Virus record (IMG/VR): IMGVR_UViG_3300030673_000004
Span: 186,001-250,000 of that record
Length of the DNA stretch: 64,000 nt
Reading direction: 5' to 3' (one strand)
Shown here: piece after piece, positions 2,764 through 47,340 of the stretch
Layout of the letters: each line of letters starts with the position of its first letter
How positions within the stretch are numbered: position 1 is the stretch's first letter
Made by a program: the position numbers and the translations under genes
Notes under the pieces: model-generated
Told to the model about the DNA's origin: nothing
What the model saw: only the letters and a program-made list of their open reading frames with translations
The model's database searches: none

Positions 2764-3177
2764 ATGCCAAGCGTTCGTGAATATGTAGAATCTCGTGCTT
2801 CTCAGCTAGGAATGAACAAAACTAATGTTCAGTATATCCTAGGTAACTTAGCAACTGCATCTATTGCTGGTGAAGTATCTGCAAGTGACTTGTATCAGTC
2901 GATGGCTGATCGTGCTTTGCAGTCTTTAGCTAAGCGGCTCAAGCGTGATGCTGATACGGAAAAGAAGCATAAGGAAGAATTTGAAGCTAATCGTCCCGCA
3001 AAGCGTCCTTTTGGAACTAATGATTCAGCCTTGGAAGAGGCTAAGGATCCGTTCACGGGGGAGCGTTTGAAGAAGGTGTATCTCCTAGGTGATCGTGAGG
3101 CACTTATGAATGAACACTCTAAGGTTGTTTATCCTATTCCAGATCTATCCAAAGTAGAGGGGGAAGACAAGGCATGA
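2764..3177 (+). CDS. hypothetical protein
   Basis: ORF with GGAGGT RBS. Confidence 0.75.
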   Translation: MPSVREYVESRASQLGMNKTNVQYILGNLATASIAGEVSASDLYQSMADRALQSLAKRLKRDADTEKKHKEEFEANRPAKRPFGTNDSALEEAKDPFTGERLKKVYLLGDREALMNEHSKVVYPIPDLSKVEGEDKA

Positions 3178-3620
3178 GTGCTACTGACATGATATCTGCT
3201 ACATTAGCCACTACCGGAGTGCCCCATTTGGTCATTGCCGAAGACACCCGAATAGATGCCAAAGTTACTATTCGTATTAAGCGCTTGCTAGATTTGACGG
3301 AACGTGGTCAGATACGCTGGGTGGCTACAGGTAGAGGTGACATATTCACTACGTATAACAAAGATGTTCAGTGCTCTGTGGTAGCTGTTGGTTTTGGGGA
3401 AGTTCCTGATGAGTATGCTCTGACTGTTTCATTCATTGGCGGTTCCTTAGGGGATCCTGAATTTAAGTACGAGGAAGTTCACTCCCCTGAGTATCCTCTG
3501 ATTGTTAAGCTTTTTGACGCAGCTTCAAAGCACAATATCCCAGAGAGCACGAGTACCTGGCCCTATCCTAAGTACTCTAACATATCAGATGCTCTTTCTG
3601 GTTTGCTGTCTGGTATTTAG
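3174..3620 (+). CDS. hypothetical protein, family A, with shared N-terminal motif
   Basis: ATGA overlap; ISATLATTGVPHLVIA; IKRLLDLTERGQIRW. Confidence 0.7.
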   Translation: MSATDMISATLATTGVPHLVIAEDTRIDAKVTIRIKRLLDLTERGQIRWVATGRGDIFTTYNKDVQCSVVAVGFGEVPDEYALTVSFIGGSLGDPEFKYEEVHSPEYPLIVKLFDAASKHNIPESTSTWPYPKYSNISDALSGLLSGI

Positions 3621-3622
3621 TA

Positions 3623-3952
3623 ATGTATGTTGTATACGCATCACAGGTGCTAAAATCATTTAATATACCATATATTGTGGTATCCTCATTAGGTGTAGCA
3701 CTACCTAGGCATATACTGCAGTTTACTTTGAAGGATAAGCATCTTACAGGTGATGGTACCTCCTACTGGGTTTATACCGGAATTACGTCTGTCGGACATA
3801 CTATAATCTCTGTTAAGATGCAAGGTCCCATTATACACGCGGCTGTTTGGCATAGCGGCTTAGAAGTTGGCTCTGTTGAGCTGGACACTATTACCGAGCT
3901 TCCAGAATCTTTGATAAATAAAGTATCTGGTGTGCTTAATATAATATCTTGA
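3623..3952 (+). CDS. hypothetical protein
   Basis: ORF; SQVLKSFNIPYIVVS resembles the shared motif. Confidence 0.55.
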   Translation: MYVVYASQVLKSFNIPYIVVSSLGVALPRHILQFTLKDKHLTGDGTSYWVYTGITSVGHTIISVKMQGPIIHAAVWHSGLEVGSVELDTITELPESLINKVSGVLNIIS

Positions 3953-3985
3953 CATATATATATATATATATAATTAATGTATATT
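3949..3985 (+). promoter_or_regulatory. sigma70-like promoter with (TA)9 tract in the spacer
   Basis: TTGACA(3949-3954), (TA)9 (3955-3972), ATTAATG, TATATT(3980-3985); spacer 25 nt. Confidence 0.65.
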
Positions 3986-4005
3986 TGAGCTAAGGGGTAC
4001 TGCAA

Positions 4006-4623
4006 ATGTCTAACACTAACACTAACACTAACACTAACACTAATTTTGTCTCTAGCCTATTGGGTAGCGCACATGTGGCTCATATTGCAGTTGCTTCGGA
4101 ATCACAAAAGCCACGATCCTGTGTGTTTGTTGATGGCGCTACTCCTACTTTCGATTTTTCTGGCTTCTGTGATCGCGCAAAGGTTAATGCTGAGCAGGAA
4201 GCTGTAAAAGTTTTTCATGTGCAGAAAAGCTATGCTAGGTTTAATCTGACATTTGACTACAAGGGGGCGGATCATAAGGGCTTAGCCGGTGTCGTGATTT
4301 GTAGCATGGATAATGGAGAACATTTTCAAATTAGTCTTCGTCCATCCGGAAACAGCCCTTTTGAGCATCGTGTTGTAGTTGAGCACAATGCAGATCATAA
4401 AGTGTACGATGAATCTGGCAAGGTGCTTAAATGGGTAGATGAAGAAGCTGAACGTTCTCGTCAGATGACTTCTGTTGTTTTTACTGGTATTTTTGTTTCT
4501 AGCAACAATGCCGAGGACATTGGTAGTTCCGCATTCTTTAATAAGCTGTTTACTGCTGTTGCTGAGAATGCTCCATACACAGAACAGCAAGATTCTTTGA
4601 TTAAGCGTGTAAAGCGTATCTAG
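4006..4623 (+). CDS. hypothetical protein with (NT)n N-terminus
   Basis: ORF; (ACTAAC)n repeat at 4010-4044; VSSLLGSAHVAHIAVAS. Confidence 0.75.
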   Translation: MSNTNTNTNTNTNFVSSLLGSAHVAHIAVASESQKPRSCVFVDGATPTFDFSGFCDRAKVNAEQEAVKVFHVQKSYARFNLTFDYKGADHKGLAGVVICSMDNGEHFQISLRPSGNSPFEHRVVVEHNADHKVYDESGKVLKWVDEEAERSRQMTSVVFTGIFVSSNNAEDIGSSAFFNKLFTAVAENAPYTEQQDSLIKRVKRI

Positions 4624-4645
4624 TTCTTACTCACACCTTTTGAAT

Positions 4646-4688: not shown

Positions 4689-4700
4689 TAAGGATAGTGC

Positions 4701-6845
4701 ATGCCTTCATTTGTAAAAGTTGGAGACGCTCCTAGTCAGAATTACTTTGGCACCAATATGATGTCAACAGCCCCTATGGCTGTTGCTAAGTCTGGCAAGC
4801 GCTCTGCATCAAATCTTGGGTATACAGGCACAGCTCAAGCTGATGTCATGTTCAATACAGATAGATACGCACCAAACGTAGAGTCCTTGGAGCGTGAAAG
4901 TCTTTTAGATGATATTACACCTAAAACTGATTATGCCCAAGCACAGCTATTCAACAGAATCTATCGTGATGATTCTGTAGCGGGTCAGGGCACGGATATG
5001 ATTGCTACCCTTCCCTGGTCAGATATGACCTTGTCCGGTATTGATGATCCAGCAATCATGCGCATCTATGAAGAAACCGTAGAGCAGTTGGATCCTGTTC
5101 AGTTGATGCCTGAGATAACACGCGAGTTTCTTAAGTTTGGACGCCACTCATCTACTTTGCTATTTGATGAGGATAATGGAACATTCTTTGATATGTTCGC
5201 ACATGATCCGCAGTTCTTAGAGATCACTCCTATTCCTATTCGTGGCTGGGATCCTAAGATTGATTGGGTTTGTGCTCCTGATATGCGAAAGTTCCTTGAG
5301 TCCAAGGATGACCGTGATAAAGCCGCTAAAGGCAGCTTGCCAGATAACCTACGCAGGGCTCTTCTTACAGGTAAGGCTGCTTTAGATCCAGCAACAACCT
5401 TGTATGTACCTCGTCGTGTTAATACCTATGATCATAAAGGTACATCTATATATTTTCGTATCTTACCGTATTATGCTATTGAAAAGCATTTACAGGCAGG
5501 TACTATTACAATGGCCCGCCGTCGTATTCGTTCTATTCTGCACGCCTCTGTAGGTATTGATAACGTGTGGGAACCCACGATGGACGAGTTGGATGAAGTC
5601 CAACGTATTTTTGTTCAGACAGAAGAGGATCCCACTGGTGCTGTTGTTGTTACTCGTAATGGTATAACGGTATCCGAATACCGTAATGGTGGTGACTTTT
5701 GGAAGTTGTCGGAGGAACAAGATTCTCTGCGTGCTGCAAAGCTTGCCGCTATGGGCTTATCTGACACCTTCTTGACTGGGGAAGCTAGCTATACAACAAC
5801 GGAAGCTACACTGTCCGTGTTCATGGAGAGCATTAAAGTCATGCGCTCCTATATTGCACAGAAGGTCTGGGAGCATACGATCTTTGATAGATTAGCTCGT
5901 GCTCATCAGTTTCTGCGCCGTACACCTGCTGAACTATCACACCATGTTCGTACCACAGCATCCATGTCCTTTGAAGATGCTATGGATATTCCACGTAACA
6001 GTTTATTGCTGCCTACGATTCACTGGAACAAAAATCTATCGCCTGAGTCGGATACTTCTTACATTGATATTTTGGAGAAGATAGAGCAGCATGGGGTGCC
6101 TATTTCTCTGAAGACATGGGCATCTGCTGGTGGCTTAGACCTGTCTTCTTTGATGGAGCAGTTGCCAGAAGATGCTAAGCTTCGTGGGCAAATTGACAAG
6201 CTGCATCCTGAAGAGGGTGAGGGTGGCGAAGGCGGTGGGAGCGGAGGTGGCGACTTTGGTGGAGCATTTAGTTCTACTGTTGCTACGCCTTCTACATACT
6301 TCTGGCAGCCTGCTATTAGATCTGTAGCTTATGCCTCTGGGAATATGTCCGCTGATCAACCTGTCATGGATTTAACACCGTCTGAGTGGGCTTCTGTTGT
6401 CAGCTATGTAACCAAAGACAACCGTCGCATGGGCATCCTAAAGGATAACGCCGCATTGTCTCGGTACCTGGGTGAGCGGTTTTCTGAGGCTACAGCAAAG
6501 ATAGAAACATCAAAGTTTCTTTTGAATAGACTTGGTTTCGCTACTGTTCCTGTTGCTCGTGAGACTGTTGAACGTCTTGCGAATCTATATGAGACACAAT
6601 CAAAAGTAGCACAGGCTAGTCATAATAAGGATCTTATTAGATTGGTTCGTGCTGAGATTATCAAACTTACCGATATATACAACCGTTCTTCTCAACAGAC
6701 GAGTTTAGGGTCGTCTTCTTCGGGTCCCAGTGCTCGTATAACTGATGGTTTTGCTTCTGTGAGCAATAATATGGTTAGTGCTAGCCAGGGACCCAAGATC
6801 AAGGATGAGACCTCCAAGCTTACTATGTATTCCGGATTGGGCTAG
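4701..6845 (+). CDS. probable portal protein with C-terminal extension
   Basis: GTSIYFRIL..YAIEK......MARRR.RSILHASVG and AAMGLSDTFLTGEASY resemble T4 gp20-type portals; Gly-rich linker before the extension. Confidence 0.6.
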   Translation: MPSFVKVGDAPSQNYFGTNMMSTAPMAVAKSGKRSASNLGYTGTAQADVMFNTDRYAPNVESLERESLLDDITPKTDYAQAQLFNRIYRDDSVAGQGTDMIATLPWSDMTLSGIDDPAIMRIYEETVEQLDPVQLMPEITREFLKFGRHSSTLLFDEDNGTFFDMFAHDPQFLEITPIPIRGWDPKIDWVCAPDMRKFLESKDDRDKAAKGSLPDNLRRALLTGKAALDPATTLYVPRRVNTYDHKGTSIYFRILPYYAIEKHLQAGTITMARRRIRSILHASVGIDNVWEPTMDELDEVQRIFVQTEEDPTGAVVVTRNGITVSEYRNGGDFWKLSEEQDSLRAAKLAAMGLSDTFLTGEASYTTTEATLSVFMESIKVMRSYIAQKVWEHTIFDRLARAHQFLRRTPAELSHHVRTTASMSFEDAMDIPRNSLLLPTIHWNKNLSPESDTSYIDILEKIEQHGVPISLKTWASAGGLDLSSLMEQLPEDAKLRGQIDKLHPEEGEGGEGGGSGGGDFGGAFSSTVATPSTYFWQPAIRSVAYASGNMSADQPVMDLTPSEWASVVSYVTKDNRRMGILKDNAALSRYLGERFSEATAKIETSKFLLNRLGFATVPVARETVERLANLYETQSKVAQASHNKDLIRLVRAEIIKLTDIYNRSSQQTSLGSSSSGPSARITDGFASVSNNMVSASQGPKIKDETSKLTMYSGLG

Positions 6846-11960: not shown

Positions 11961-13931
11961 ATGTCCGGTGAACTTGATAACCTTGCTATTGCCCTAGCTT
12001 CTGCTGGTGTACAGCACACTTATGTAAAGTCGAAACCTGAAACTATGGCAGAGCTCTCACAGGCTCTAGCTTCTGCCGGCTTGAAGCATATGCTTGTTGG
12101 TGCTCCTAATGAAGCTATCGCGGCAGGTCCGGGAAAGCGCATCTCGATCACTTACGAGACCTGGGATGATGAGTCCTTGGGTGCTGGTGAGACAGATGAT
12201 AAGGGGTGGGAGAACGAAGAAGGTATAGAGTTCAGTGACGACGGTGATGAAACCGCTGTTGATCAAGCTGTTGACTTCCTGAAAAAGGAAAGCGCTACTG
12301 AATTCTCTGCTTCTTCTTTTACTCATGGTGGTTGGTATTCAACAAGTAGCAACGATAGTGATCGTGATCTACAGACAGGTGAATTGACTACTTACTCCTA
12401 TCATCTGAATGACGGATGGACTGATGAAGAGAAACAGGCTATCTATGATGGTGTTACAGGGGTAGGCTCTTCTAATGAAGCTGAAGCTTCCATTTCGGGT
12501 ATTAAATGGCGATCTGAGACAGTATACCCTAATGATGATGAGGGTGCTTTCCTTCGTGGTACTAGTCCGGCAGGGGAAGAAGTTGAAGCTTTACTTGGTA
12601 CTGACGCAGATAATGCTGCGATTCGTGCTAACAAGCAGAGAATCTTAAGTACAGGTGATACTACCGGATGTCCTATTCGTCTTGTTCATCCGCATTCTAA
12701 TGAAGCTGAAGCTGCTGCTTCTACAGTAATAACGGCTGCGGGCTATACGAACCTAGATGCCTCTACCGTAGCGAAGATTGGGCGTGATCTCCCCTTCAAA
12801 ATTAACAAGGGAAGCGTAAGCGGCTCACCTACCTTTAGCGGTTCGGGTTGGGCTCGTGAAGAAGCTACTAATGTAATTGAGAAGCTCAAGAGCGCTGGGG
12901 CGGATTACTGGATTTATAGTTATCAGACCCCTATTCTTGCTAGGCTGGACAATCAGTGGTATGATATTCCTGGTAAATACTCTCCAACAACAACTCGTCA
13001 TCAGGGTGGTCTCTCTCGCCAATTCGATGCTAAGGCATTTGATGCGTCTGTTACGGACTCAAATGTCCGTCGTCCCGTAGCTCCTGGTGGGCTGGATCTA
13101 GATGCAGAAGCGTCCTTCAACCTAGGTGCTCTATCTCATGCTCTGGCTACTGCTGGTGTTAAGCATACTATTGTAACTGCGTTTGAACCTTCAGCGCCTA
13201 TTGATGTTGTGATTACTTCGGGTACTGTAAAGAAGCAATTGACAATTAGACCTAATCGGTTTGCAGCAGATTATAATGTGAGTCAGTTGGTGGGTGCTAT
13301 TGAGGCGTGGTCTACTAAATACATGGGACCATCTGAAGCAACAGCAGCTACTGAAGATGCTACTGAGCCTTTCTTTATCACTATCAAGCATGGTGCTAAA
13401 GAAGTTACTGTTAAGTATGTTCAGTCTCCTTATGATCCTGAAGCTAAGACTATTCGTAGTTTTGTACAAGCACTACATACAGTAGGTGGTCGGTACAAGG
13501 GAACGCAGTTTGTTGAAGTTCCCCATAATGAAGCAACAGCAGCTACTGAAGTACTTGCTTTTGGTGCAACACATCTCCCTGAAGCCGCTAGGACGAAGAT
13601 TGAGCGCGGTCTTCCATTCAAAATTAATAAGGGCAGCGTTAGTGGCTCGCCAACTTTCCAAGGTGCTGGGTGGGCTGAAAATAACCAGGAAAGCATGCGT
13701 GTCATAGATAAGCTGCAGACTTTGGGTGCCGACTACTGGCTATATAGCTATGCAACTCCTATTGGAGCTCGTGTTAACGATCAGTGGTATATAATTCCTG
13801 GCAAGTACTCTCCAACAACAACTCGTCATCAGTATATCCTTTCTGATTTGAATGCACAAACGTTGGATGCCGGTACACCCTCTGCTAATGTCCGTCGTCC
13901 CGTAGCTCCTGGTGGATTGGATCTCGATTAA
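11961..13931 (+). CDS. modular polyprotein with duplicated ~110-aa domain, probable virion internal protein
   Basis: ATG 11961 after GAGGT; three ALA(S/T)AGxxH motifs; repeated (N/S)EAxA(A/S); two copies of LPFKINKG...YSYxTPI...YSPTTTRHQ...PGGLDLD. Confidence 0.75.
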   Translation: MSGELDNLAIALASAGVQHTYVKSKPETMAELSQALASAGLKHMLVGAPNEAIAAGPGKRISITYETWDDESLGAGETDDKGWENEEGIEFSDDGDETAVDQAVDFLKKESATEFSASSFTHGGWYSTSSNDSDRDLQTGELTTYSYHLNDGWTDEEKQAIYDGVTGVGSSNEAEASISGIKWRSETVYPNDDEGAFLRGTSPAGEEVEALLGTDADNAAIRANKQRILSTGDTTGCPIRLVHPHSNEAEAAASTVITAAGYTNLDASTVAKIGRDLPFKINKGSVSGSPTFSGSGWAREEATNVIEKLKSAGADYWIYSYQTPILARLDNQWYDIPGKYSPTTTRHQGGLSRQFDAKAFDASVTDSNVRRPVAPGGLDLDAEASFNLGALSHALATAGVKHTIVTAFEPSAPIDVVITSGTVKKQLTIRPNRFAADYNVSQLVGAIEAWSTKYMGPSEATAATEDATEPFFITIKHGAKEVTVKYVQSPYDPEAKTIRSFVQALHTVGGRYKGTQFVEVPHNEATAATEVLAFGATHLPEAARTKIERGLPFKINKGSVSGSPTFQGAGWAENNQESMRVIDKLQTLGADYWLYSYATPIGARVNDQWYIIPGKYSPTTTRHQYILSDLNAQTLDAGTPSANVRRPVAPGGLDLD

Positions 13932-14566: not shown

Positions 14567-17211
14567 TTGGAAAGACAATGCTTCACTACGTAACTGCATC
14601 TCAAGTAACTAACCTAGGTAAATTCCGTGTCGTATCAAAGACACCTGCTGAGTGTTCTGCTGAAGAGATCAAGCAGTTTGCTACTTTGCTTGCTGAGGGT
14701 GGCCAAGTAGCATCTACGGGTATGGAGACGCGGATCAAGTTGGCTAAAGTTCTAGGTTTTGCTTATTCAGTAGACTCTAATGAACTTGTGGGTGTTTCAG
14801 CTCTAAAAGTACCGTTGGATTCATATCGCAAGTATGTTGAGAGGGGCGCGGGTGTTTCTCTACCTACTGAGGAATTTCCTTATGAGGTTGGCTGGTTGTA
14901 CGTAAAGCCAGAATACCGTGGTGCTCGTGCAGGTCAGATGCTTAGGTATCTGCTTGTTCAGCCTGTATTAGGTATTAGAGCCGGGGCTTTTGCTACTATT
15001 AGACATGATAACTTTATGCCCCAGAGAATCATATCTAAGTATGGTTTTGATCATGCTGGGCATGTTTGGACTTCTGAGCAGACAGGCAATGCTATTGACT
15101 TGTTTACTCGTTCTGCTGATAAGGGTATTCTTCAATCTGTTGCTTCTGCTCAGATTGAGTATGAAGCTATCTATATGTCATCTGCTCTATCTCGTGTTTT
15201 GAGTGATTCTCATATAGAGGCTGTATGCAAGCGTGTTCCTGCTCTGGCCAGTGTTGCCGTTAAGGCTTTGGCTCTGGGATATACTCAAGCAGGCTCGGAT
15301 CTGGCTGTCGCTATTGCAACAGAAGATGCAGACTTAGCAGCACATGCTCTGAATCTACTGAATACTGATGCTGAAGTAGATATGCACAAAGCTGATCCTG
15401 ATTTTAAGATTTTAGGCGATATTGAATCAGCCCCATTTTCTCATGAACCGCATCCGGAGTTTGTTCATGACGAAGCTGAACATAGTGATGGCTGTGCGTG
15501 TCCTGAATGCACAGGAGTACCCAGTGCCGAAGATGTTTCCTCTGAGATAGGCTTGATCTTTCAAGCAGCAATTTCAGAACCTAAGGAAGATATCCACCCG
15601 GTCAAGCAATTAATTGATTTGGTGTCTGGGCTTAAAGCTGCTCGTACTGATCTTCCTCAGGTTGAGCTCGGAGCCAATCCTTCCTATAATCAAGTATGTT
15701 TAGAGCACTTAGGTAAATTGGGCTGCCCGGAACTCGGTGCTGTTGAATCTATTGTGAAGACACCTGATGTTTCTTTGGATATGAATGAAGCTCACGAGAC
15801 ATTCTTACGTTTAGATAAGACAATCCGTGAGAAGCTGTCAGAGGCTGATGGGCCTGAGGCTGATCGACTGCAGCGTGTGCTGATTAACCTAGAGACGCTG
15901 ATGTCTGATATCTTTCAGTCTAATGTTGCGTTGGCTTCTGAGTATGTTCCGTTTGGTGGCGTGCTTCATCGGACAGGGGCCATCCGTGTTGTTGGTATAC
16001 GTCCATTAGCTAATCGTACTGGAGTGTGGGAAATTCTTACTCACTTCCAAGATGGGACGATCTTAAAGAGTGTCGCTTCTAATAAGAGAAGCTTGGGTCT
16101 ATGCATCAATATGCTTAAGCTAGATACCAAAGTTAATTTTAGGGGTACGTTAGGTCGTACTGTTAAAGACGGTATCCTTTTGCAAGATGGTCGTGAGTTA
16201 AAGCTTTTAGACAAGTCTTTTGTTAATGATAAAACTGCTGAAGTTGCTCATGAAGCTAAAGAGGGTTCACCTGTAAGCAGTGTAGCTTCTGTAGCTGTAG
16301 CAAGCACAGCAACAGACAGGCTGTACTCTAAGATTGAAGAGCGTCTAAAGTCCAGTAAGCCTGCTCTCAGATCCGCCTCTGTTACTATCTCTGAGCTAGC
16401 TGGGTCTGTTCTTGTTGTAATCCAGGATGTTGTTCTAAAGCCTGATGGTTTATCTAAGATTGTTGGGCGTGCTGTGACAGATAAGACTAAGAGCTTTACT
16501 CGTGCTTCTGGTACTGAGTTTGAGCTTGAGAAGTCTCCTGGTAAGTTTGGGCGTGTCGGGGATGTATCTATAAAGATCAACACAGGTAATGCTCGGCAGA
16601 CACAGGATGCTCTCGGACTGATACGTCGTTTATTTAGTAACGCTTTGAGCTACGGTGGGAATACAGTTGTCGAGGCTACTGCTTCTGTTAATGATGATTT
16701 GAAGTCACAAGCTATTCGCGAGATAGCATCTTCATTGACTCGCCTTGCTGATAGGTCTAGGAATACATATTCTGCCATTCAGATACTGGCTAAGCAGGAA
16801 TCTACCGGGAACGGTCTTGTAGACATCCCTGCCCAGGTTGAACAGGCTATAGCTAAGTGCTTTGAGTCGTTGTTCCATGTTGAGCAACTGGTCTTTCGTC
16901 AGTTGGCTCAGGATAAAGCTGTTATTGAACCTAGCTATAAGAGTCTAACTCCTGAAGAGAGCAAGGCTGTAGCATCCCTTTTCATACCTATCTACAGGAA
17001 CAAAAATGTATCGGCTTACCGTACTGCTTTGTTCACAGTTGCTGATGCTTTCGGCAATTCAAAGCCACGTGTTCCTGGTGATTTGATCAAGTTAGCTCAG
17101 ACACTGCCACCTGCTTGTGACTTCATTGAAGCTGCTGTGTCTGTGTGGGTACGTCTAATCACAAGATCTGTGCGACTTAGATCACCTTCAGTTTCCGAAC
17201 CCCATGCATAA
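14563..17211 (+). CDS. large multidomain protein with N-terminal GNAT-like acetyltransferase domain
   Basis: EVGWLYVKPEYRGARAG and N...RIISKYGF GNAT motifs; several AxAS sites. Confidence 0.7.
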   Translation: MIGKTMLHYVTASQVTNLGKFRVVSKTPAECSAEEIKQFATLLAEGGQVASTGMETRIKLAKVLGFAYSVDSNELVGVSALKVPLDSYRKYVERGAGVSLPTEEFPYEVGWLYVKPEYRGARAGQMLRYLLVQPVLGIRAGAFATIRHDNFMPQRIISKYGFDHAGHVWTSEQTGNAIDLFTRSADKGILQSVASAQIEYEAIYMSSALSRVLSDSHIEAVCKRVPALASVAVKALALGYTQAGSDLAVAIATEDADLAAHALNLLNTDAEVDMHKADPDFKILGDIESAPFSHEPHPEFVHDEAEHSDGCACPECTGVPSAEDVSSEIGLIFQAAISEPKEDIHPVKQLIDLVSGLKAARTDLPQVELGANPSYNQVCLEHLGKLGCPELGAVESIVKTPDVSLDMNEAHETFLRLDKTIREKLSEADGPEADRLQRVLINLETLMSDIFQSNVALASEYVPFGGVLHRTGAIRVVGIRPLANRTGVWEILTHFQDGTILKSVASNKRSLGLCINMLKLDTKVNFRGTLGRTVKDGILLQDGRELKLLDKSFVNDKTAEVAHEAKEGSPVSSVASVAVASTATDRLYSKIEERLKSSKPALRSASVTISELAGSVLVVIQDVVLKPDGLSKIVGRAVTDKTKSFTRASGTEFELEKSPGKFGRVGDVSIKINTGNARQTQDALGLIRRLFSNALSYGGNTVVEATASVNDDLKSQAIREIASSLTRLADRSRNTYSAIQILAKQESTGNGLVDIPAQVEQAIAKCFESLFHVEQLVFRQLAQDKAVIEPSYKSLTPEESKAVASLFIPIYRNKNVSAYRTALFTVADAFGNSKPRVPGDLIKLAQTLPPACDFIEAAVSVWVRLITRSVRLRSPSVSEPHA

Positions 17212-32360: not shown

Positions 32361-32408
32361 TAGAAAACCGCCTTGACAGGCATACGACTTTTAGTTATTA
32401 TTGTCTGT

Positions 32409-36886: not shown

Positions 36887-36931
36887 TTCTGGACATTACC
36901 AATATTATCAACATAGTAATTGGAGTTTTCA

Positions 36932-40713: not shown

Positions 40714-43641
40714 ATGACTGACGCTAATTCATCTAGAGTTCGCCAAACATGGCAACGTGGGGAGCAGGCCGAGTTCCGTTTCTCTTTTGTTAACTCTTCC
40801 GGTGATGCTTTAGTTCCTTTGGATGCTAATAAATATCCGAATTATGCTTTTGTATCCCCATCGGGTCTTCAGATACAGACAGGGACAGCTCAAGCTTATG
40901 GCACTCCTGGGCAATATCGTGTTTTATGGACAATTCCTCAAGATAGTGAGTTATCTAATGATGAGATGTCCTGGCAGTTACAAGTAAACTTTGTTACGGC
41001 GCGCCGTTCTCAATTAACACATACCTTTGATTTCTTTGTTGTAGACAAGCAGGTAACAGCTACAGGTCGTAAAGATGTTGTAAACTTAGCTATTCAAGGA
41101 TCACCTCATCGTTTGTTTTGGCGTGGTGATTTTGATCCGGCGGAGATTACATTGGAGTGTTATGCCTCTCCCTACGCAGATAACTCTGATCTAGCCCCAA
41201 TTCCACATGCTGCTGCTCTAAATAAATCAGCTCTGACTAAAGTGATAGATGGTGATAGTATAGTTTACTATTATGAGATCCCCTCATCTGCGTTTACTTT
41301 ATGGGATCCTTTGAACAATCTGTATACTGGTCTGTGGTCTGTTCGTGAGACATCTGTATCTGAACTCCAAGTGGAGTATGATCAGTTTCGTGTCATCAAG
41401 AAGCAGATGGTTCAGTACATACAGTCTATTCGTTTCATGGTGGATAGATTCCAGCATAGGTTAGGTACCCCTCAGCATATTAGTGATGGAGATCTCTGCG
41501 AGGCTCTTACGGAGGGCTTGGGCCTGTTTAACGGTTGGTTCCCTGTATCTAACTACAACTGGACTGACTTTCCTATGCAGTGCTCTACATACTGGATTAT
41601 GCTTTCTACTTGGTGGATGCTGAATTCTCAACATATGCTCCAATCACAGCTCGCATTTTCTTTCTGTGTCACTGAGGATACTTATGTGTCTACAAATCGG
41701 GGTCTTGTGCAAGCTAAGTATTTGCGGCCAGGTGCCCTGGAGCATGATGTTCTAAAACTAGTAGCATCTATTGCTTTTCACCCAGATAGAGAAGCTGTTC
41801 TTACTGGTATTATAGCTAATTCTTCTGACATAAAAGACCAGAAATTAGGGTTATCTGAATTAGTTGCTTCTACAGCACCGGAAGTAGCAAGTAATTCAAT
41901 TTTGAGCATGTTTTCCAACTATGAGTTATCTCAGTTTGCCACTCATGATGAGTGGCGTCGTATCTTAATTGATTGTTCAGATGCTTTGTTTACATTTATT
42001 AATGAAACTCTTCTTGCAAATACCATAATCAGCACAAATGCTAAGTTTGACACAAAATTTAAGCTGCTTACACCTTATGGTAGAGATGTTCCTACTTGTG
42101 TTTGGGACCTTGGTGCAAAGCCTGTCTATAGATTAGAAACAGCGCACGGGTACTCTTTGAAAGCAACAGGAAATCACCCGGTATTAGTTTTAGATAAAGA
42201 ACTTAATGTACAAAACAAGAACTTAGCCGATATCTCTGTGGGTGATGTTGTCGCTATATCTAAGCGTCATGACAGTGCTGACGAGGATTGGGATATTGAT
42301 TTATCGTTTTTGGTGGATGCTGTTAATAGATACACAATTAAAGGTGCTAAAAATTACGAACTTCCCAGAAAAATGACTCCTGCCTTAGCTCGGGTACTCG
42401 GCTACATTACGAGTGAGGGCTATATAAATACTGAGGGGATTATATCTTTCTGTAATATAAATCAAATTTTATTAGATGACTACGTTAAAAACTTCACGGA
42501 ATGCTTTGGTGTTGCTCCGAAGTATAAAGGATTTCAGATAAGTAGTGCTGGAAATAAAGTACACTACTACGAAGAATCAAATCGTAAAATAGCCATGTTT
42601 TTGATTGGGTGCGGAGAGCAATTTAAGCAGGCACCTGACAAAGAAATTCCGTGGTCTATCATGGCAGCACCTCGTAGGTTAGCTCGTGAATTTATTCAAG
42701 CCTTTTTTGAGGGAGATGGGTCTTATACATCATATGATACGTCTAAGCAAAAAGGTAAAACTTTTATGAGCTTTGCATCCTCTAGTACAAAGATGCTAGA
42801 TCAATTTCAAAGCCTGCTGCTTAGATTTGGGATTATTACATCTAAGCATAGATATGCGTCAGCACAAGTTCCGCAAATACATGTACCAAGTTCTGCTATT
42901 GATATCTATGCAGATACCATAGGTTTTTGGTATAAGGGTAGAGATCATAAGCCGCGTGTTCGTTACTATGAGCAAGTAGAAGCATACCCTGAGTTTGTTG
43001 GTACTTATATTAAGTCTCTTTTTTCCGGAGCTAATAAGGGTTGGCATACAGATTCAGAAACAGGTAAAAAGTTTAGAGTGTATTCTGGTTTGACTTTGAA
43101 CGCAACTCAAGCTATTTTTGATAGCCGGTGTCCTACACAGAAAAATCTATTATTCTATTTAGAACAGCGTACAGAGTTGTTAGCTAAGTTAAAGCCTGAC
43201 GTTCTAAAGAAACTTAAGTATTTAGCTGATCTTGACTTTCAGTGGGAATCTGTACACAGTATAGATACACTGGAAACAGAAGAATGCGTTATAGACCCTA
43301 CTCTTCCAGATCGTGATACGGACTTAGCACACCACTTCTATGCTAATGGATTTGTTACCCATAACTCTGGCCAAGCCGTCACGCTAGATTATGATCAGAC
43401 AGGTGCAATTGACTCTGCTATTCAGCGTTTGAGCGAGTGGTTGAATGCACATATTACTCCACAAAAGATTATGATTAGCCGTCAGCGTTCTGGTGTGGGT
43501 AGTTTGGGCATTCGTACTCAGCGTGCTTTTGGTGCATACAACCGTGTTCTCCGGTATGACTCGGCTCGTGGTATTGATTCCAACGTTGGGTTTGAAGGTG
43601 TTCTTAATGCAGCCGCGACTTACGGTATCTTCCTGCCTTAA
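40714..43641 (+). CDS. intein-containing probable virion (neck/adaptor-like) protein; ~408 aa after splicing
   Basis: beta-sandwich-like N-terminus plus helical IRFMVDR...ISDGDL..AL..GL..FN region; exteins rejoin as AFSF/SGQAVTLDYD. Confidence 0.65.
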   Translation: MTDANSSRVRQTWQRGEQAEFRFSFVNSSGDALVPLDANKYPNYAFVSPSGLQIQTGTAQAYGTPGQYRVLWTIPQDSELSNDEMSWQLQVNFVTARRSQLTHTFDFFVVDKQVTATGRKDVVNLAIQGSPHRLFWRGDFDPAEITLECYASPYADNSDLAPIPHAAALNKSALTKVIDGDSIVYYYEIPSSAFTLWDPLNNLYTGLWSVRETSVSELQVEYDQFRVIKKQMVQYIQSIRFMVDRFQHRLGTPQHISDGDLCEALTEGLGLFNGWFPVSNYNWTDFPMQCSTYWIMLSTWWMLNSQHMLQSQLAFSFCVTEDTYVSTNRGLVQAKYLRPGALEHDVLKLVASIAFHPDREAVLTGIIANSSDIKDQKLGLSELVASTAPEVASNSILSMFSNYELSQFATHDEWRRILIDCSDALFTFINETLLANTIISTNAKFDTKFKLLTPYGRDVPTCVWDLGAKPVYRLETAHGYSLKATGNHPVLVLDKELNVQNKNLADISVGDVVAISKRHDSADEDWDIDLSFLVDAVNRYTIKGAKNYELPRKMTPALARVLGYITSEGYINTEGIISFCNINQILLDDYVKNFTECFGVAPKYKGFQISSAGNKVHYYEESNRKIAMFLIGCGEQFKQAPDKEIPWSIMAAPRRLAREFIQAFFEGDGSYTSYDTSKQKGKTFMSFASSSTKMLDQFQSLLLRFGIITSKHRYASAQVPQIHVPSSAIDIYADTIGFWYKGRDHKPRVRYYEQVEAYPEFVGTYIKSLFSGANKGWHTDSETGKKFRVYSGLTLNATQAIFDSRCPTQKNLLFYLEQRTELLAKLKPDVLKKLKYLADLDFQWESVHSIDTLETEECVIDPTLPDRDTDLAHHFYANGFVTHNSGQAVTLDYDQTGAIDSAIQRLSEWLNAHITPQKIMISRQRSGVGSLGIRTQRAFGAYNRVLRYDSARGIDSNVGFEGVLNAAATYGIFLP
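41665..43365 (+). mobile_element. intein with LAGLIDADG homing endonuclease (C318-N884, 567 aa)
   Basis: block A CVTEDTYV, block B LKATGNHPV, LARVLGYITSEG and FIQAFFEGDGS, block G FYANGFVTHN/S. Confidence 0.93.
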
Positions 43642-43646
43642 TACTA

Positions 43647-44095
43647 TGACAAATACAAATACCATATCTTCTGTTTTATCTTTGTTCGCTGTAGATCATG
43701 TTGTAATTGCTGCTGAACAAAAGCCTATAACAGAAGAGATATATGCACATTATTATAAGCTATCAGGACCGCAGAGAGATATTTTTGGCTGTAGACGACA
43801 GTTCTGGAATATAAAATTTCGGTTACCTAGCATAGGTGTATGCACAGTATCCGGTAGTTCATCGCCTATTAAATTTGAGGCTACACTAGCCTGTGATGGC
43901 GCACAGGATCGTCATTTTATACTTACAAATAAACAAATAATTAGACCATTTACAACAGATGTTCTTATTGTAAATGATGATGTAATAGCAAAGATCAAAG
44001 CTGTTATTGCTCACCCAAGTGAGCTTGCAAACGATATTCTAATAACACCTGGTGCTGAAGCACACTTTATACACGACTTAATAGAAAAGTTCTGA
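43647..44095 (+). CDS. hypothetical protein with shared N-terminal motif
   Basis: MTNTNTISSVLSLFAVDHVVIAAE; start moved to the ATG after the upstream stop. Confidence 0.65.
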
Positions 44096-44105
44096 GGAGT
44101 TACCT

Positions 44106-44540
44106 ATGATTCGCGTTCCAACTGATCTTCCATACCACAGTATCGCCATAGCCGATGCTAATGACCCTATGGCACCTGCTAAATCTGGTGAGCCGACACA
44201 GAGTGGTACAATGGCTGCTCCTGTTAAGGATGCTGCTCCTCCTGTTGATGAAAACGGCCCTGAGCCGCAGAGCGCACCTTTACCAAATGCTGATGCTCCT
44301 AGGGCGCAGGGGTTCGGTGTTCCTGATAGCCAAACGGCAGATACCGCTCCGGGACTTACTGATATTGAGTTTGCAGAACTCAAATCTATCTTTGAGAATC
44401 TACAGAAAACTTCGGTTACCCGAGGTAAAGACGCGAAACAAGTCTACAAAGAAGTCGCTAAAGCTATCTGGCAGAAGTATGCTAAAAAGATATCGGCATC
44501 ACAGCGTTCTGAGTTTAATAAACTGCCACCGATACGCTAG
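44106..44540 (+). CDS. Pro/Ala-rich hypothetical protein
   Basis: GAGGAG RBS; LPYHSIAIA. Confidence 0.7.
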   Translation: MIRVPTDLPYHSIAIADANDPMAPAKSGEPTQSGTMAAPVKDAAPPVDENGPEPQSAPLPNADAPRAQGFGVPDSQTADTAPGLTDIEFAELKSIFENLQKTSVTRGKDAKQVYKEVAKAIWQKYAKKISASQRSEFNKLPPIR

Positions 44541-44684
44541 CTAATATTTCTTTCAAGCATTCTTGAGCCTACCTGAACGTATGCAGTATTCTGTGTACGT
44601 TTTTCTTTTGGTTCCTGCTCATCCTCGGCTTGTTGTTCTTCGCGTTGTTCTGCTTTTTTAATTTTGATCAGTCGCATTTAATCT

Positions 44685-45287
44685 TTAGTTGATTAGATCA
44701 CATAACATGTTTTCATAATTTTCGTCTGTCTCATCCTGCGAAATGGCTCTATCATACTCCCTCAGTAACACATCAATGCCATTCAGGGCAAAGTTTACTT
44801 CTCTGGCCTTGCCATAGCGCAGGCAATCTAGTAGGCTTAACCATATATACAAATCAGGACTGCGCGTAGCTACGATTGGCACAGTTTTGAACAGAGGCTC
44901 AACGCTTATGCCTGTTATTCTTGCAGGTACTTCTGTTTCTACTGCATATTCCCACACAATAGGTGTGCCTGATACTATATGTGATAGATCTGCTATGGTG
45001 CTCTGTGACCATGCTGTAGGTAGGCCAAGAACTGAGTTCTCAGTGACCGCGCCAGGATAGACATAGGGAACAGCTCTTAGTACGTCTTTCGTGTTGCTTG
45101 AGAATACTCGTCCTGTTACTTTAGATACCAAGTGACCCGTAAGTAACCGTTCCAGGCTTTCAAGTAATTCTATTTCTGTTGTGGCACAGTAGTAGATAGC
45201 TTCTGCTTTATCGCCATGGCTTGTAGGCTCTGTTCCTCCTGACGTAATAAGGTAGCCCAAAAGCCCGAGGTCTTGAGGTTGCAGCAT
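44685..45287 (-). CDS. wHTH protein resembling type IV TA (AbiEi-like) antitoxins
   Basis: MLQPQD..LL, YVYP...GLPTA, VEPLFKTVP, LY.WLSLLDCLRYGKARE; ATG 6 nt after a -10 box. Confidence 0.55.
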   Translation of the reverse strand: MLQPQDLGLLGYLITSGGTEPTSHGDKAEAIYYCATTEIELLESLERLLTGHLVSKVTGRVFSSNTKDVLRAVPYVYPGAVTENSVLGLPTAWSQSTIADLSHIVSGTPIVWEYAVETEVPARITGISVEPLFKTVPIVATRSPDLYIWLSLLDCLRYGKAREVNFALNGIDVLLREYDRAISQDETDENYENMLCDLIN

Positions 45288-45335
45288 ACTTTGAATATAC
45301 AGTAAACAGAGCCTTTTGTCAATTAACTTCTTAGT

Positions 45336-45725
45336 ATGAAAGATGCAACACAGCTTACGCTTCGTATCACGAGCCGACTTCGTGTTAATCTTATGTTTTG
45401 GTGGGCTGGTCAATGTGTTATTACACCAACTATCATAGCTTTTTTAATAACACATACATTTATGCTTGCCTGGTTACGTTTTAGCGTATCTGTCACCTAT
45501 GATCCTGCTCGGGATAGTGTCCCAGCAGCTAAGAAAACATATGAAAAGCTTTTCATTCTAGGTAACAGACTTCGTGTTTTATTAGAACATCGCGGTGATT
45601 CAACCTATAGAACCGTGATACCCGCTTTGTTTTACATTCCTTTGGATACATATGCGCAAGATTGGACATTTAGCTGGTTGACATCCGGAATAACTCTACG
45701 AATTAGGTGTAAGTACCATGAGTAG
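45336..45725 (+). CDS. hypothetical membrane protein
   Basis: ORF with a hydrophobic segment, overlaps the next gene. Confidence 0.5.
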   Translation: MKDATQLTLRITSRLRVNLMFWWAGQCVITPTIIAFLITHTFMLAWLRFSVSVTYDPARDSVPAAKKTYEKLFILGNRLRVLLEHRGDSTYRTVIPALFYIPLDTYAQDWTFSWLTSGITLRIRCKYHE

Positions 45726-47340
45726 TACTGCTGCTGTGTCTAGTATTTTATCTAAGCATAATGTACCTTATATTGTTGCTTATGCCACTGAAATGTCTAA
45801 GATACGTGACATTTCGGTTGCTGGCCCTTCCGAGTATGCCTCCAATACAACATCCCTTATCTCTGTGCTGCATACTTGCTGTGTTCCTCATATTTGTGTT
45901 GAGGCTAAGTATAGTAGGGAGAATGATTTCCTTCGTGGTGCTTTGGCAGAGAGAGACCTAAAGCATGATGTATATCTTATTCATGAGTGGGGTCCTGCTG
46001 CTCTTTATTTTAAGTACTGTCAAGATAACAATAAAGCTGAGTATCAAAAACTTGTAGATGCTTCTGGTACTGCATCTCCAGATAGAAATGATCTGTTTGA
46101 TGCAATTTTAGAAGATAAGTATGTGCCTTCCCCTGGTGCTGTTGAGGAGTTTCTTAAGAATACATCGGAAGATCGCTTGCGGCAAGCGATCCGGGAAGAT
46201 GACGAAAGTGATTCATCTGTAAATTTTAGTTTGAATAATCACGGTAAGCTTCTCCCTAGAAACACATGGGTAGGTCACTTCTGCTCAGATGCTCGTTCTA
46301 TTGCATCTCATGGTTTTATGCATGGTGAACCTGACGCTTACTCCTTAGGATTAACAAGACTCAAGTCAGATGAGGCTCGATATGGACATACTGGGTATAA
46401 TTTTGGCTTTGATGTTAAGACTATGCGCAAGAATTGGCAGCGAGGTGTTGCAAAATATGGCAAGGAGCTTGTATTATTTCAAACTTCAGGTGTGTCTGCT
46501 TATCACTCTGGTGATGAGGAGGACCAAATCATATTCTGGGGTCCTCATATAGAGTGGGTTGTGCCTATTGTTCCAGCTCCTGTAGAGAATTACGAGTATC
46601 AGTCTGATGACGATTATGCCGTACTCGCAACTGATGGTTCGTATGCTTTTCGCACGTCATCCGAAGTGCCTAATTCTGCTACTTATGGATTTAATGCTGA
46701 AAAGAATTGCCGTGCTTGTGTCGAGTGGGTTGTTAAAAATATCAATGCTTATCGCAAGTCACTTATTTGGTACCTACCGAAGAATACTGCGAATACTGCG
46801 ACTGACTCAGGTTCTGCCCTGGCTTCTAACGATATGCTACATAATTCTATTGGGATTACTGCGGCTAATCACAGGATCCCCTCTTTAGAGGATCTAGACG
46901 AGGCAGAGCTGGCAGAGTTTGAACGGTGGTCGCTTGCTGGGTTGATTAGAGATGAAGTAGGAAAGCCGCTTTTACTGTTTCACGGTGGGGACGAAGAACT
47001 GCGCGACGATGATTGGTGGACACCGGATCTTAGAAATACTCGTGAGTTCGGACACATTACGCACTGTGCCTACTTGCGCATGAATAATCCCGCACATGAA
47101 GAAGACTTAGTTGCTATATACAATGAGTTGTTTGCTACAGAGTATGACTGGGACGATTTATTAGATGTGATGGATACAACGCCTGCCGATTTTCTAGAGC
47201 AGAATCAGTTATACTTTGAGGCTGTCCGCAAAAATCATGATGGCTTTATCATTTTTGATAATTCCCTAGAGCACCCAGGACTGGCATACCGTGTGTTTGA
47301 TGTAGACACAGATGCTTGGGTCTTGGGTACAGTTTCTTAG
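45718..47340 (+). CDS. polyprotein with putative ADP-ribosyltransferase-fold domain(s)
   Basis: two copies of the shared N-terminal motif; RDEVGKPLLLFHGG...WWT...AYLRMNNP...HDGFII resembles ART-PolyVal. Confidence 0.55.
   Translation: MSSTAAVSSILSKHNVPYIVAYATEMSKIRDISVAGPSEYASNTTSLISVLHTCCVPHICVEAKYSRENDFLRGALAERDLKHDVYLIHEWGPAALYFKYCQDNNKAEYQKLVDASGTASPDRNDLFDAILEDKYVPSPGAVEEFLKNTSEDRLRQAIREDDESDSSVNFSLNNHGKLLPRNTWVGHFCSDARSIASHGFMHGEPDAYSLGLTRLKSDEARYGHTGYNFGFDVKTMRKNWQRGVAKYGKELVLFQTSGVSAYHSGDEEDQIIFWGPHIEWVVPIVPAPVENYEYQSDDDYAVLATDGSYAFRTSSEVPNSATYGFNAEKNCRACVEWVVKNINAYRKSLIWYLPKNTANTATDSGSALASNDMLHNSIGITAANHRIPSLEDLDEAELAEFERWSLAGLIRDEVGKPLLLFHGGDEELRDDDWWTPDLRNTREFGHITHCAYLRMNNPAHEEDLVAIYNELFATEYDWDDLLDVMDTTPADFLEQNQLYFEAVRKNHDGFIIFDNSLEHPGLAYRVFDVDTDAWVLGTVS

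What the first reader, a model, noticed from the sequence alone, without database searches (positions are those of the whole stretch)
3174..47340. Shared ~16-aa leader motif on many unrelated proteins: candidate capsid-targeting signal
Seen: ISATLATTGVPHLVIA (3174), SQVLKSFNIPYIVVS (3623), VSSLLGSAHVAHIAVA (4006), LAIALASAGVQHTYV, LSQALASAGLKHMLVG and LSHALATAGVKHTIVTA (11961, three copies), ISSVLSLFAVDHVVIA (43647), VSSILSKHNVPYIVAYA and LISVLHTCCVPHICVEA (45718, two copies), and partially LPYHSIAIA (44106). The bodies of these proteins are unrelated. Known: T4 internal proteins share an N-terminal capsid-targeting sequence that the prohead protease removes. Inference: a modular tag that loads cargo into the head. 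One family A paralog (3174) has it and three do not.
Basis: partly seen in the sequence, partly recalled or inferred. Interest (0 to 1): 0.7.

Follow-up and report, generated by a model that had tools for sequence, protein, structure and literature searches.

The report
Shared N-terminal cargo tag, jumbo phage
A 17-residue N-terminal tag is attached to at least eight unrelated proteins encoded near the head genes of a 375-kb phage. It is probably a removable signal that loads cargo proteins into the capsid, but no experiment has tested this.

Summary
A profile built from the nine window copies finds a tenth full copy outside the window at 15.5 bits, against 4.6 bits for the best reversed-sequence decoy. 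The consensus is [LV]-S-x-x-L-x-x-x-x-V-P-H-[IT]-V-V-A-[AS].

- **Position:** seven of the eight carrier proteins have the tag within their first 16 residues, usually starting at residue 6-7.
- **Carriers:** their bodies show no BLAST similarity to one another. All lie within 71 kb, next to the portal and head-tail connector genes.
- **Conservation:** the tag sits at matching N-termini in uncultivated relatives with 70-91% portal identity. Variant forms occur in relatives with 42-47% portal identity.
- **Link to junctions:** in relatives the tag heads multi-domain ART-PolyVal effector proteins. Its last residues (V-A-[AS]) align with their domain junctions (x-T-A-[SA]), and the same domain follows either a tag or a junction.
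- **Protease:** the genome encodes a head maturation protease with the T4 gp21 fold and invariant His, Ser and Glu.

Best reading is a two-part propeptide, with a targeting half and a protease-site half, like the T4 capsid targeting sequence but with a different sequence and probably an Ala-Ala/Ser cut. Cleavage and packaging are inferred, not shown. This is a new variant of a known kind.

The parts
3192..3242 (+). Full tag, residues 7-23 of the 148-aa protein 3174-3620. This gene ends about 1.1 kb upstream of the portal gene.
   Evidence: HMM 20-22 bits. The ortholog L038:3695-4141 keeps the tag.
3638..3688 (+). Full tag, residues 6-22 of the 109-aa protein 3623-3952.
   Evidence: HMM 22-24 bits. 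The ortholog L038:4141-4473 keeps it.
4048..4098 (+). Full tag, residues 15-31 of the 205-aa protein 4006-4623, preceded by a Thr-Asn repeat.
   Evidence: HMM 14-16 bits. Orthologs in L038 and L040 keep the tag. L038 has a ~130-residue insertion directly after it.
4701..6845 (+). Portal protein gene. It anchors the first cluster of tagged genes. Its N-terminus has a conserved A-[VI]-A-[KR] stretch (4776-4790).
   Evidence: tblastn to annotated portals of PaBG, BcepSauron and Erwinia/Xanthomonas jumbo phages, E 1e-61 to 1e-84. N-termini of orthologs are shown.
11982..12032 (+). Tag copy 1 of the 656-aa protein 11961-13931 (residues 8-24).
   Evidence: HMM 17-18 bits. Conserved in L038, L039 and L040.
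12054..12104 (+). Tag copy 2 of the same protein, in tandem 24 residues after copy 1.
   Evidence: HMM 16-18 bits. Conserved in L038 and L040.
13131..13181 (+). Tag copy 3, internal (residues 391-407). It opens the second half of the internally duplicated protein.
   Evidence: HMM 20-21 bits. Conserved in L038.
12474..13544 (+). Short junction motifs N-E-A-[ET]-A-[AS] inside the 11961 protein, at 12474-12491, 12699-12716, 13332-13349 and 13527-13544, plus V-I-T-A-A at 12726-12740. Orthologs gain or lose domains at these points.
   Evidence: NEA[ET]A occurs 5 times in the proteome against 0.16 expected. Indel boundaries are visible in alignment A3.
14584..14601 (+). Possible minimal junction H-Y-V-T-A-S, at residues 3-8 counted from the internal Met of the 882-aa protein 14563-17211. 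Low confidence.
   Evidence: Conserved as HYVTA[SA] in L038 and L040.
40714..43641 (+). Head-tail-connector-like gene interrupted by an intein. It anchors the second cluster of tagged genes.
   Evidence: phrog_17327 head-tail connector, E 4e-10. Intein_splicing and LAGLIDADG_3 domains.
43664..43714 (+). Full tag, residues 7-23 of the 149-aa protein 43646-44095. This gene occupies a variable cargo slot after the connector gene.
   Evidence: HMM 16-19 bits. The same slot holds two other tagged genes in L035 and none in L033.
44127..44153 (+). Half tag (second half only, L-P-Y-H-S-I-A-I-A) at residues 8-16 of the Pro/Ala-rich 144-aa protein 44106-44540.
   Evidence: Orthologs keep H-x-I-A-[IL]-A-[DE]. 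It scores below the full-tag HMM threshold.
45736..45786 (+). Tag copy 1, residues 7-23 of the 540-aa protein 45718-47340.
   Evidence: HMM 20-22 bits. The same tag heads ART-PolyVal proteins P0006 and P0007.
45856..45906 (+). Tag copy 2, residues 47-63. It lies directly before a conserved ~300-residue domain that begins K-Y-S-R-E-N.
   Evidence: HMM 23-25 bits. A tag or degenerate tag precedes this domain in P0002-P0005, P0008 and P0009.
46852..46869 (+). Internal junction G-I-T-A-A-N, placed before the C-terminal domain that begins H-R-I-P-S-L.
   Evidence: The same domain follows N-E-A-T-A-A-S in P0006 and A-T-A-S-S in P0007. In the separate gene L033:11452-11982 it follows a full tag ending V-V-A-A-K.

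Best explanation
The motif is a two-part N-terminal propeptide that marks proteins for loading into the prohead and is then removed by the phage head maturation protease.

**Proposed parts.** The first half (positions 1-9, [LV]-S-x-x-L-x-x-x-x, probably a short helix) is proposed to hold the cargo to a component of the assembling head, such as the scaffold core, the protease or the inner shell. The second half (positions 10-17, V-P-H-[IT]-V-V-A-[AS]) is proposed to be the protease site, cut at or next to A-[AS].

**Junctions.** The same short site, without the first half, separates domains inside multi-domain cargo proteins. One tag could therefore carry in a chain of effector domains that the protease then cuts apart.

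**Cargo.** It includes ADP-ribosyltransferase-like polyvalent effectors in relatives, and many proteins of unknown function.

**Shown:** the motif, its N-terminal position, its modularity, its conservation, its alignment with domain junctions, the neighbourhood of head genes, and the presence of a protease with the gp21 fold.

**Inferred:** packaging, cleavage, the exact bond cut, and which half does what.
For: 1. **Real and specific.** The out-of-sample copy scores 15.5 bits against a decoy maximum of 4.6. There are 27 unique copies in the genome and its relatives, all 14 bits or more, against a decoy maximum of 6.5.
2. **Position.** The tag starts at residue 3-16, most often 6-7, in 7 of the 8 carrier proteins of this genome and in nearly all relatives.
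3. **Modular.** Bodies are unrelated. Orthologs keep the tag while domains are inserted or lost directly behind it (A2 and A3). The slot after the connector gene holds different tagged genes in different phages.
4. **Selected at protein level.** Mean DNA identity between copies is 47%. Information peaks at H12 (4.6 bits), L5 (3.4) and S2 (3.0).
5. **Tag end equals domain junction (a).** The H-R-I-P-S-L domain follows I-T-A-A in the window protein, E-A-T-A-A in P0006 and A-T-A-S in P0007. In a separate gene of L033 it follows a full tag ending V-V-A-A.
6. **Tag end equals domain junction (b).** In all seven cases examined, the ART-PolyVal domain start lies 6-7 residues after either tag position 17 or a junction T-A-[SA].
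7. **Junction motifs are enriched.** [IVA]TA[SA] occurs 51 times against 30.5 +/- 6 expected, and NEA[ET]A 5 times against 0.16. The scaffold-like protein next to the protease carries several such sites.
8. **A suitable protease exists.** It matches phrog_18299 head maturation protease at E 9e-49. His144, Ser199 and Glu249 are invariant in 88 homologs. The model (pLDDT 83.7) matches only T4 gp21 significantly in the PDB.
9. **Context.** Carriers lie within 1.6 kb upstream and 5 kb downstream of the portal gene and directly after the connector gene.
10. **Cargo class.** Tagged relatives carry PF18760 ART-PolyVal. Such polyvalent proteins are predicted to travel in the virion (PMC5512222).
11. 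**Precedent.** The T4 CTS is two-part in the same way: residues 4 and 7 target, residues 8 and 10 govern processing (PMC9026906).
Against: - There are no proteomic, structural or genetic data for this phage or its close relatives. All relatives found are metagenomic contigs.
- The complex prediction of protease with a tag peptide gave no verdict, so it is not evidence either way.
- The tag does not end in the Glu-containing sites known for T4, phiKZ or SPN3US. The proposed Ala-Ala/Ser cut rests on alignment of junctions and on analogy with herpesvirus assemblin.
- Major capsid protein N-termini of relatives show no clear conserved junction that would independently fix the protease's specificity.
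- The simple junction pattern is only mildly enriched at N-termini across the proteome (p 0.02).
- The two halves almost never occur separately above decoy level in this genome. The split into a targeting half and a cutting half is therefore argued from the internal junctions, not shown.
- The AF2 model of a tagged domain has low confidence in the tag (pLDDT about 30).
Confidence: 0.55

Rival explanations
1. The motif is only a protease-processing signal, that is, a propeptide plus an extended recognition site. It has no targeting role. Cargo enters the head through its body domains or by passive trapping, and the conserved first half is an exosite for the protease.
For: - The tag end aligns with the internal junctions.
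- The halves are not found apart.
- A gp21-fold protease is present.
- In SPN3US many long propeptides are cut without proof of a targeting role (PMC5694885).
Against: - Internal junctions lack the first half, yet the first half is strongly conserved (S2 and L5). It sits almost only at N-termini.
- The bodies are too diverse to share another loading feature.
- In T4 the matching short propeptide is sufficient for targeting.
Confidence: 0.2
2. The motif is an interaction or localisation tag for something other than the prohead. Candidates are a phage chaperone, an ejection or injection apparatus, a replication compartment, or the amidoligase and peptidase enzymes encoded nearby that might modify it.
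For: - The window encodes five Amidoligase_2 paralogs, a Peptidase_C1 and a radical SAM enzyme close to the carriers.
- No direct link to the capsid has been measured.
Against: - The Peptidase_C1 gene is absent from L033, which keeps its tags.
- Carriers cluster with the portal and connector genes, not inside the amidoligase array.
- The junction architecture resembles head-protease polyprotein processing.
- The tag heads ART-PolyVal effectors, which are expected to be injected.
Confidence: 0.15
3. The motif is a classical export signal (Sec, Tat or lipoprotein), or a chance or compositional similarity.
For: It is N-terminal and partly hydrophobic.
Against: - As read directly from the copies, it has no basic n-region, no 10-15-residue hydrophobic core, no twin-arginine motif and no lipobox Cys.
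- It recurs inside proteins.
- Chance is excluded by the decoy comparison and by conservation across relatives.
Confidence: 0.03

Closest known systems
Phage T4 capsid targeting sequence (CTS) of internal proteins IPI-III and Alt, removed by the gp21 protease
   Same: - A short N-terminal propeptide is shared by otherwise unrelated internal or injected proteins.
- The logic is two-part: targeting residues first, the processing site at the end (PMC9026906).
- Carriers sit in variable gene slots.
- The phage encodes a gp21-fold protease.
   Different: - There is no sequence similarity.
- It is 17 residues plus a 5-6-residue lead-in, against 10-19 residues in T4.
- It ends in V-V-A-[AS], not [LI]-x-Glu.
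- It is reused inside proteins and in tandem.
- It is linked to short junctions that divide multi-domain proteins.
- Its function is untested here.
Propeptides of phiKZ, 201phi2-1 and SPN3US ejection and inner-body proteins
   Same: - These are jumbo phages in which many head-internal proteins lose N-terminal propeptides to a gp21-like protease.
- They have multiple cuts per protein.
- N-termini are conserved between diverged paralogs (gp53 and gp54) (PMC5694885).
   Different: - Those propeptides are mostly longer than 100 residues and are cut after [SAG]-x-Glu.
- Conservation there is between paralogs. Here one short consensus is shared by proteins with no detectable relationship.
- This phage's portal and capsid genes are of the PaBG type, not the phiKZ type.
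Polyvalent proteins of phages and conjugative elements (Iyer et al. 2017), including the ART-PolyVal domain PF18760
   Same: - Relatives' tagged proteins are chains of ART-PolyVal and other effector domains.
- They are predicted to be delivered with the DNA.
   Different: - That study, as searched, does not mention a shared N-terminal tag or a common inter-domain junction motif.
- The window's own 45718 protein has no Pfam hit at E 0.01 or better.
Herpesvirus assemblin cleavage sites, (V/L/I)-x-Ala then Ser
   Same: - The inferred junction x-[TV]-A then [AS] has the same form.
- Assemblin and gp21 share a fold.
- Mature pseudorabies virus assemblin ends in Ala225 (PMC4498786).
- The consensus itself is cited from my own knowledge (Welch 1991; DiIanni 1993).
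   Different: - The protease here has an invariant His-Ser-Glu set, not Ser-His-His.
- The EBV protease is only a weak fold match, at rank 45.
- Cleavage has not been measured.
Encapsulin cargo-loading peptides and phage P1 DarB N-terminal targeting region
   Same: These are short terminal peptides that are enough to load foreign cargo into an HK97-fold shell or a phage head.
   Different: - Their consensus differs and encapsulin peptides are usually C-terminal.
- They are not removed by a protease.
- No binding partner has been identified here.

Membership tests
T4-type capsid targeting sequence | A short N-terminal peptide shared by unrelated head-internal proteins | tested here: met
   There are ten full copies in eight proteins, seven of them N-terminal, and the bodies are unrelated.
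T4-type capsid targeting sequence | Sequence similarity to the T4 CTS and a [LI]-x-Glu cleavage site at its end | tested here: not met
   The consensus ends V-V-A-[AS]. Position 17 is Glu in only 2 of 27 copies.
T4-type capsid targeting sequence | The phage encodes a gp21-fold prohead protease | tested here: met
   phrog_18299 at E 9e-49. His, Ser and Glu are invariant. Foldseek matches 5jbl with probability 1.0.
T4-type capsid targeting sequence | The peptide is removed in the prohead and is sufficient to package a foreign protein | not testable with these tools
   This needs virion mass spectrometry and reporter fusions. The complex prediction gave no verdict.
Polyvalent effector proteins (ART-PolyVal, PF18760) | Several effector domains, including PF18760, in one polypeptide of a phage | tested here: inconclusive
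   Met in relatives: P0003, P0004, P0006, P0007 and the L035 genes. The window protein 45718-47340 has no Pfam hit at E 0.01 or better. The atlas search gave only weak ART-like leads, with scores below 0.9.
Assemblin-type (V/L/I)-x-Ala-Ser cleavage site | A small aliphatic residue at P3, Ala at P1 and Ser or Ala at P1', at places where domains begin | tested here: met
   The pattern is present at tag ends and at at least 12 domain junctions. It is enriched, 51 against 30.5 expected. This matches the pattern only; cleavage was not measured.
Sec, Tat or lipoprotein signal peptide | A basic n-region, a hydrophobic core of 10-15 residues, and a signal peptidase site or lipobox | tested here: not met
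   Direct reading of the 27 copies shows no basic n-region, a polar Ser/His/Pro-rich middle and no lipobox. Copies also occur inside proteins.
Encapsulin cargo-loading peptide | A terminal peptide with the encapsulin consensus that binds the inner shell surface | not tested
   The consensus differs on inspection. No binding test was possible.

The most novel reading that the evidence does not exclude
The tag is a portable address label for a whole lineage of uncultivated jumbo phages. Any protein carrying it is loaded into the head. Chains of effector domains are cut apart at short x-T-A-[AS] junctions by a gp21-fold protease that has herpesvirus-like Ala-Ser specificity rather than the Glu specificity known in phages.

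If so, the tag and the junctions together would let one read the full injected-effector set of these phages directly from sequence. That set would include ART-like enzymes and perhaps the large amidoligase families whose N-termini carry the short junction.
Probability: 0.35. Interest if true: 0.75.

Novelty: new variant of a known kind. Interest (0 to 1): 0.6.

Why it matters
Which proteins a jumbo phage injects with its DNA is usually learned only from virion mass spectrometry of cultured phages. A sequence tag that predicts cargo would allow the injected anti-host toolkit of uncultivated huge phages to be listed from metagenomes.

It would also give a short handle for packaging foreign proteins into large capsids, as the T4 CTS did. 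A phage protease cutting at Ala-Ala/Ser would tie phage and herpesvirus capsid maturation closer together than fold similarity alone does.

Tried and rejected
- **Complex prediction.** Protease (alignment A4) with residues 1-40 of a tagged protein (P0225) scored 0.02 and gave no verdict. It is not evidence either way.
- **Fold of the domain behind tag copy 2.** The AF2 model of the 45718 protein's conserved domain, built from 7 sequences, had mean pLDDT 57.7. No PDB fold match was significant. The atlas search gave only weak ART-like leads.
- **Family searches on carriers.** Pfam and PHROGs searches of all carriers gave nothing informative.
- **Phage database.** tblastn of the 45718, 11961, 10163 and 14563 proteins against 50,697 phage records found no match.
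- **IMG/VR.** Only two distant loci share one domain of the 11961 protein, and neither whole record carries the tag. Portal and 45718 queries found nothing.
- **The genome search.** A search with the 17-column alignment found nothing because the model is too short for that tool. Records behind L033 and L035 are not held.
- **Capsid protein N-termini.** The major capsid protein N-termini of 16 relatives were read to fix the protease's specificity. No clear conserved junction appeared.
- **Half-tag profiles.** They recover almost only the full tags.
- **N-terminal clustering.** BLAST-short clustering of all N-termini does not recover the tag because it is too degenerate. It recovers only true paralog families.
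- **Jug gut phages.** I considered whether the genome is one of the published 360-402 kb 'Jug' gut phages (PMC12880540). This was not established, and that paper, as searched, does not mention such a tag.

Full report
**Setting.** The window is bases 186001-250000 of a single 375,537-base phage record.

- ORF 4701-6845 is the portal. It matches annotated portals of PaBG, BcepSauron and Erwinia/Xanthomonas jumbo phages at about 30-35% identity.
- Gene 40714-43641 is a head-tail-connector-like gene interrupted by an intein.
- The other head genes lie elsewhere in the genome: a head maturation protease at 120673-121509, then a 641-residue acidic, Pro/Ala-rich scaffold-like protein, a decoration-like protein and the major capsid protein at 124381-125496. 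The large terminase is at 178963-181107.

One start coordinate is off by one: the carrier is 43646-44095.
- An HMM built from the nine window copies was run over all ORFs of 40 residues or more in the whole genome. It found the nine copies plus an unseen tenth at the N-terminus of a 166-residue protein outside the window (L001:9413-9463), scoring 15.5 bits. The best hit in the reversed proteome scored 4.6 bits.
- After adding relatives and iterating there were 27 distinct copies, all at 14 bits or more, against a decoy maximum of 6.5.
- The consensus is [LV]-S-x-x-L-x-x-x-x-V-P-H-[IT]-V-V-A-[AS]. Most information lies at His12, Leu5 and Ser2.
- The copies are not a DNA repeat: mean DNA identity is 47%.
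- With tags removed, the carriers show no BLAST similarity to each other.
- The copy at 44106 is only the second half of the tag, and orthologs conserve it in that form.
The alignment does begin right after the tag.

**Anatomy.**

- In seven of the eight carriers the tag begins at residue 4-15, and in relatives most often at residue 6-7.
- Two proteins carry extra copies. The 11961 protein has two in tandem at the N-terminus and a third opening its duplicated second half. The 45718 protein has one at the N-terminus and one 40 residues later, directly before a conserved domain.
- All eight carrier genes are on the + strand within 71 kb. They lie beside the portal gene (3174, 3623, 4006, 11961), directly after the connector gene (43646, 44106, 45718), or in a further block of large unknown genes (L001).

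**Relatives.**

- No cultured phage in the 50,697-record collection matches the carriers.
- Metagenomic contigs do. Portal homologs at 91%, 77% and 70% identity lie on contigs L038, L040 and L039, which keep the tag at matching N-termini.
- Behind the tag the proteins differ. The 4006 ortholog in L038 has a ~130-residue domain inserted immediately after the tag. The 11961 family ranges from 165 to 656 residues by gain and loss of whole domains at fixed points.
- The slot between the connector gene and the 44106 ortholog holds one tagged gene here, two different tagged genes in L035 and none in L033.
- Contigs with portals only 42-47% identical (L041, L042, L043, L044) carry recognisable variants of the tag on other proteins.
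- Two IMG/VR phages that share only one domain of the 11961 protein have no tag.

**Link to polyprotein junctions.**

- Homologs of the 45718 protein (P0002-P0009) and neighbouring genes in L035 are multi-domain proteins, several with the ART-PolyVal domain PF18760. One has 1,782 residues.
- Their domains are separated by short motifs of the form x-[ITV]-[TV]-A-[SA].
- The end of the tag aligns with these motifs. The domain beginning H-R-I-P-S-L follows I-T-A-A in the window protein, E-A-T-A-A in P0006 and A-T-A-S in P0007. In L033, where that domain is a separate gene, it follows a full tag ending V-V-A-A.
- The ART-PolyVal domain start lies 6-7 residues after either tag position 17 or a T-A-[SA] junction in all seven cases examined.
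- Junction-like strings are enriched in the proteome: [IVA]TA[SA] occurs 51 times against 30.5 +/- 6 expected, and NEA[ET]A 5 times against 0.16.
- They are frequent in the scaffold-like protein beside the protease.

**The protease.**

- The 271-residue protein matches the PHROG head maturation protease family at E 9e-49.
- It has 844 relatives in the 1.84-billion-protein library.
- In an 88-sequence alignment, His144, Ser199 and Glu249 are invariant.
- Its AF2 model (pLDDT 83.7) has T4 gp21 as its only significant PDB match. The Epstein-Barr virus protease appears far down the list.

**Interpretation.** The best-supported reading is a two-part propeptide. The conserved first half, found almost only at N-termini, would be a targeting element. 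The second half would be the protease site, which also serves alone as the separator between cargo domains.

- This mirrors the T4 CTS, where the early residues target and the last residues direct gp21 cleavage (PMC9026906).
- It also mirrors the heavy processing of ejection proteins in phiKZ-like phages (PMC5694885).
- It differs in sequence, in the probable Ala-Ala/Ser cut, which resembles herpesvirus assemblin sites (own knowledge; Ala at the mature assemblin C-terminus in PMC4498786), and in its reuse as a polyprotein punctuation mark.

**What remains inference.** Presence of the carriers in virions, removal of the tag, the exact bond cut and the binding partner are all inferred.

- The single complex prediction gave no verdict.
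- The structural model of a tagged domain was too poor to use.

**Rivals.**

- A pure processing signal without a targeting role is the main alternative. It fails to explain why the first half is conserved and restricted to N-termini.
- A tag for some other partner cannot be excluded. The nearby papain-like peptidase is dispensable, because L033 lacks it but keeps its tags.
- Export signals and chance are rejected on sequence features and statistics.

**Novelty.** The concept is known from T4, phiKZ-like phages and P1. This specific tag, its breadth across unrelated proteins and across a deep lineage of uncultivated jumbo phages, and its tie to a junction code in polyvalent effectors did not turn up in the five literature searches I ran. 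I rate it a new variant of a known kind.

Noticed in passing
window 40714-43641: The head-tail-connector-like gene carries an intein (Intein_splicing plus LAGLIDADG_3). The ortholog in L033 is intein-free (408 aa), and the one in L035 has the intein (979 aa). Many homologs of the head protease are also ~700 aa and match in two separate stretches, which suggests inteins there too.
   Followed up: partly
window 27939-30296, 32373-34787, 35417-36886, 38228-39244, 39241-40704; also G000 128226-130946: An array of Amidoligase_2 paralogs sharing a G-F-E-F-E-F core near the N-terminus. Most begin with a short extension ending in A-A or V-A-A, like the junction motif. A second family of ~1,200-aa proteins (G000 146405, 150228, 154051) starts with I-V-T-A-A or V-V-T-A-S before a shared Q-F-D-R-D. 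These proteins may also be processed cargo.
   Followed up: partly
window 36920-37693 and 1080-1916: A papain-family cysteine peptidase (Peptidase_C1) sits inside the amidoligase array and is absent from relative L033. A radical SAM protein lies upstream of the first tagged genes.
   Followed up: partly
L033 13600-19700: The close relative carries a type I-F-variant-like CRISPR-Cas module (Cas7fv-like, Cas3 HD/DEAD, CRISPR_assoc) and a repeat array a few kb downstream of its tagged cargo genes. The window has no counterpart at the matching place.
   Followed up: no
L037:9607-11532 (G000 121607-123532): The scaffold-like 641-aa protein next to the protease contains stretches that resemble the tag (L-E-A-L-A-S-A-G ... 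G-A-V-H-R-I-E-V-P-S-A, and L-A-F-A-L-A-S-V-G-V-P) and several x-T-A-S sites. The cargo tag might imitate a scaffold element. This is unexplained.
   Followed up: no
G000 177653-178813, 326296, 326700; L001:8394-9407: Possible divergent tags in which His directly follows Gly (...S-G-H-Q-L-A-T-A-S; ...I-G-H-K-A-V-A-S; ...R-G-H-E-S-I-I-T-A-S), and one without His (L-S-D-F-L-L-K-Q-G-V-V-C-A-A). All score below the profile threshold. If real, the number of tagged proteins rises to 12 or more.
   Followed up: partly
window 4006-4047 and 43646-43663: Two carriers have Thr-Asn repeats (six and two units) between the start codon and the tag.
   Followed up: no
window 47388-47459: A 36-nt unit is present twice in tandem (97% identity), just downstream of the 45718 gene and inside a doubtful ORF (47316-47891).
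   Followed up: partly
window 61732; G000 267977 and 2757; also G000 61, 8265, 371443: ORF starts reading M-Y-I-C-S-C-H-L-N-K-E-F occur three times, and starts reading L-F-L-S-P-Q-Q-G-V occur three times, across the genome. These are probably conserved DNA elements rather than protein motifs.
   Followed up: no
window 4776-4790: The portal N-terminus has a stretch A-[VI]-A-[KR]-[SA] that is conserved in orthologs with 70-91% identity. It is a possible processing site of the portal itself.
   Followed up: no
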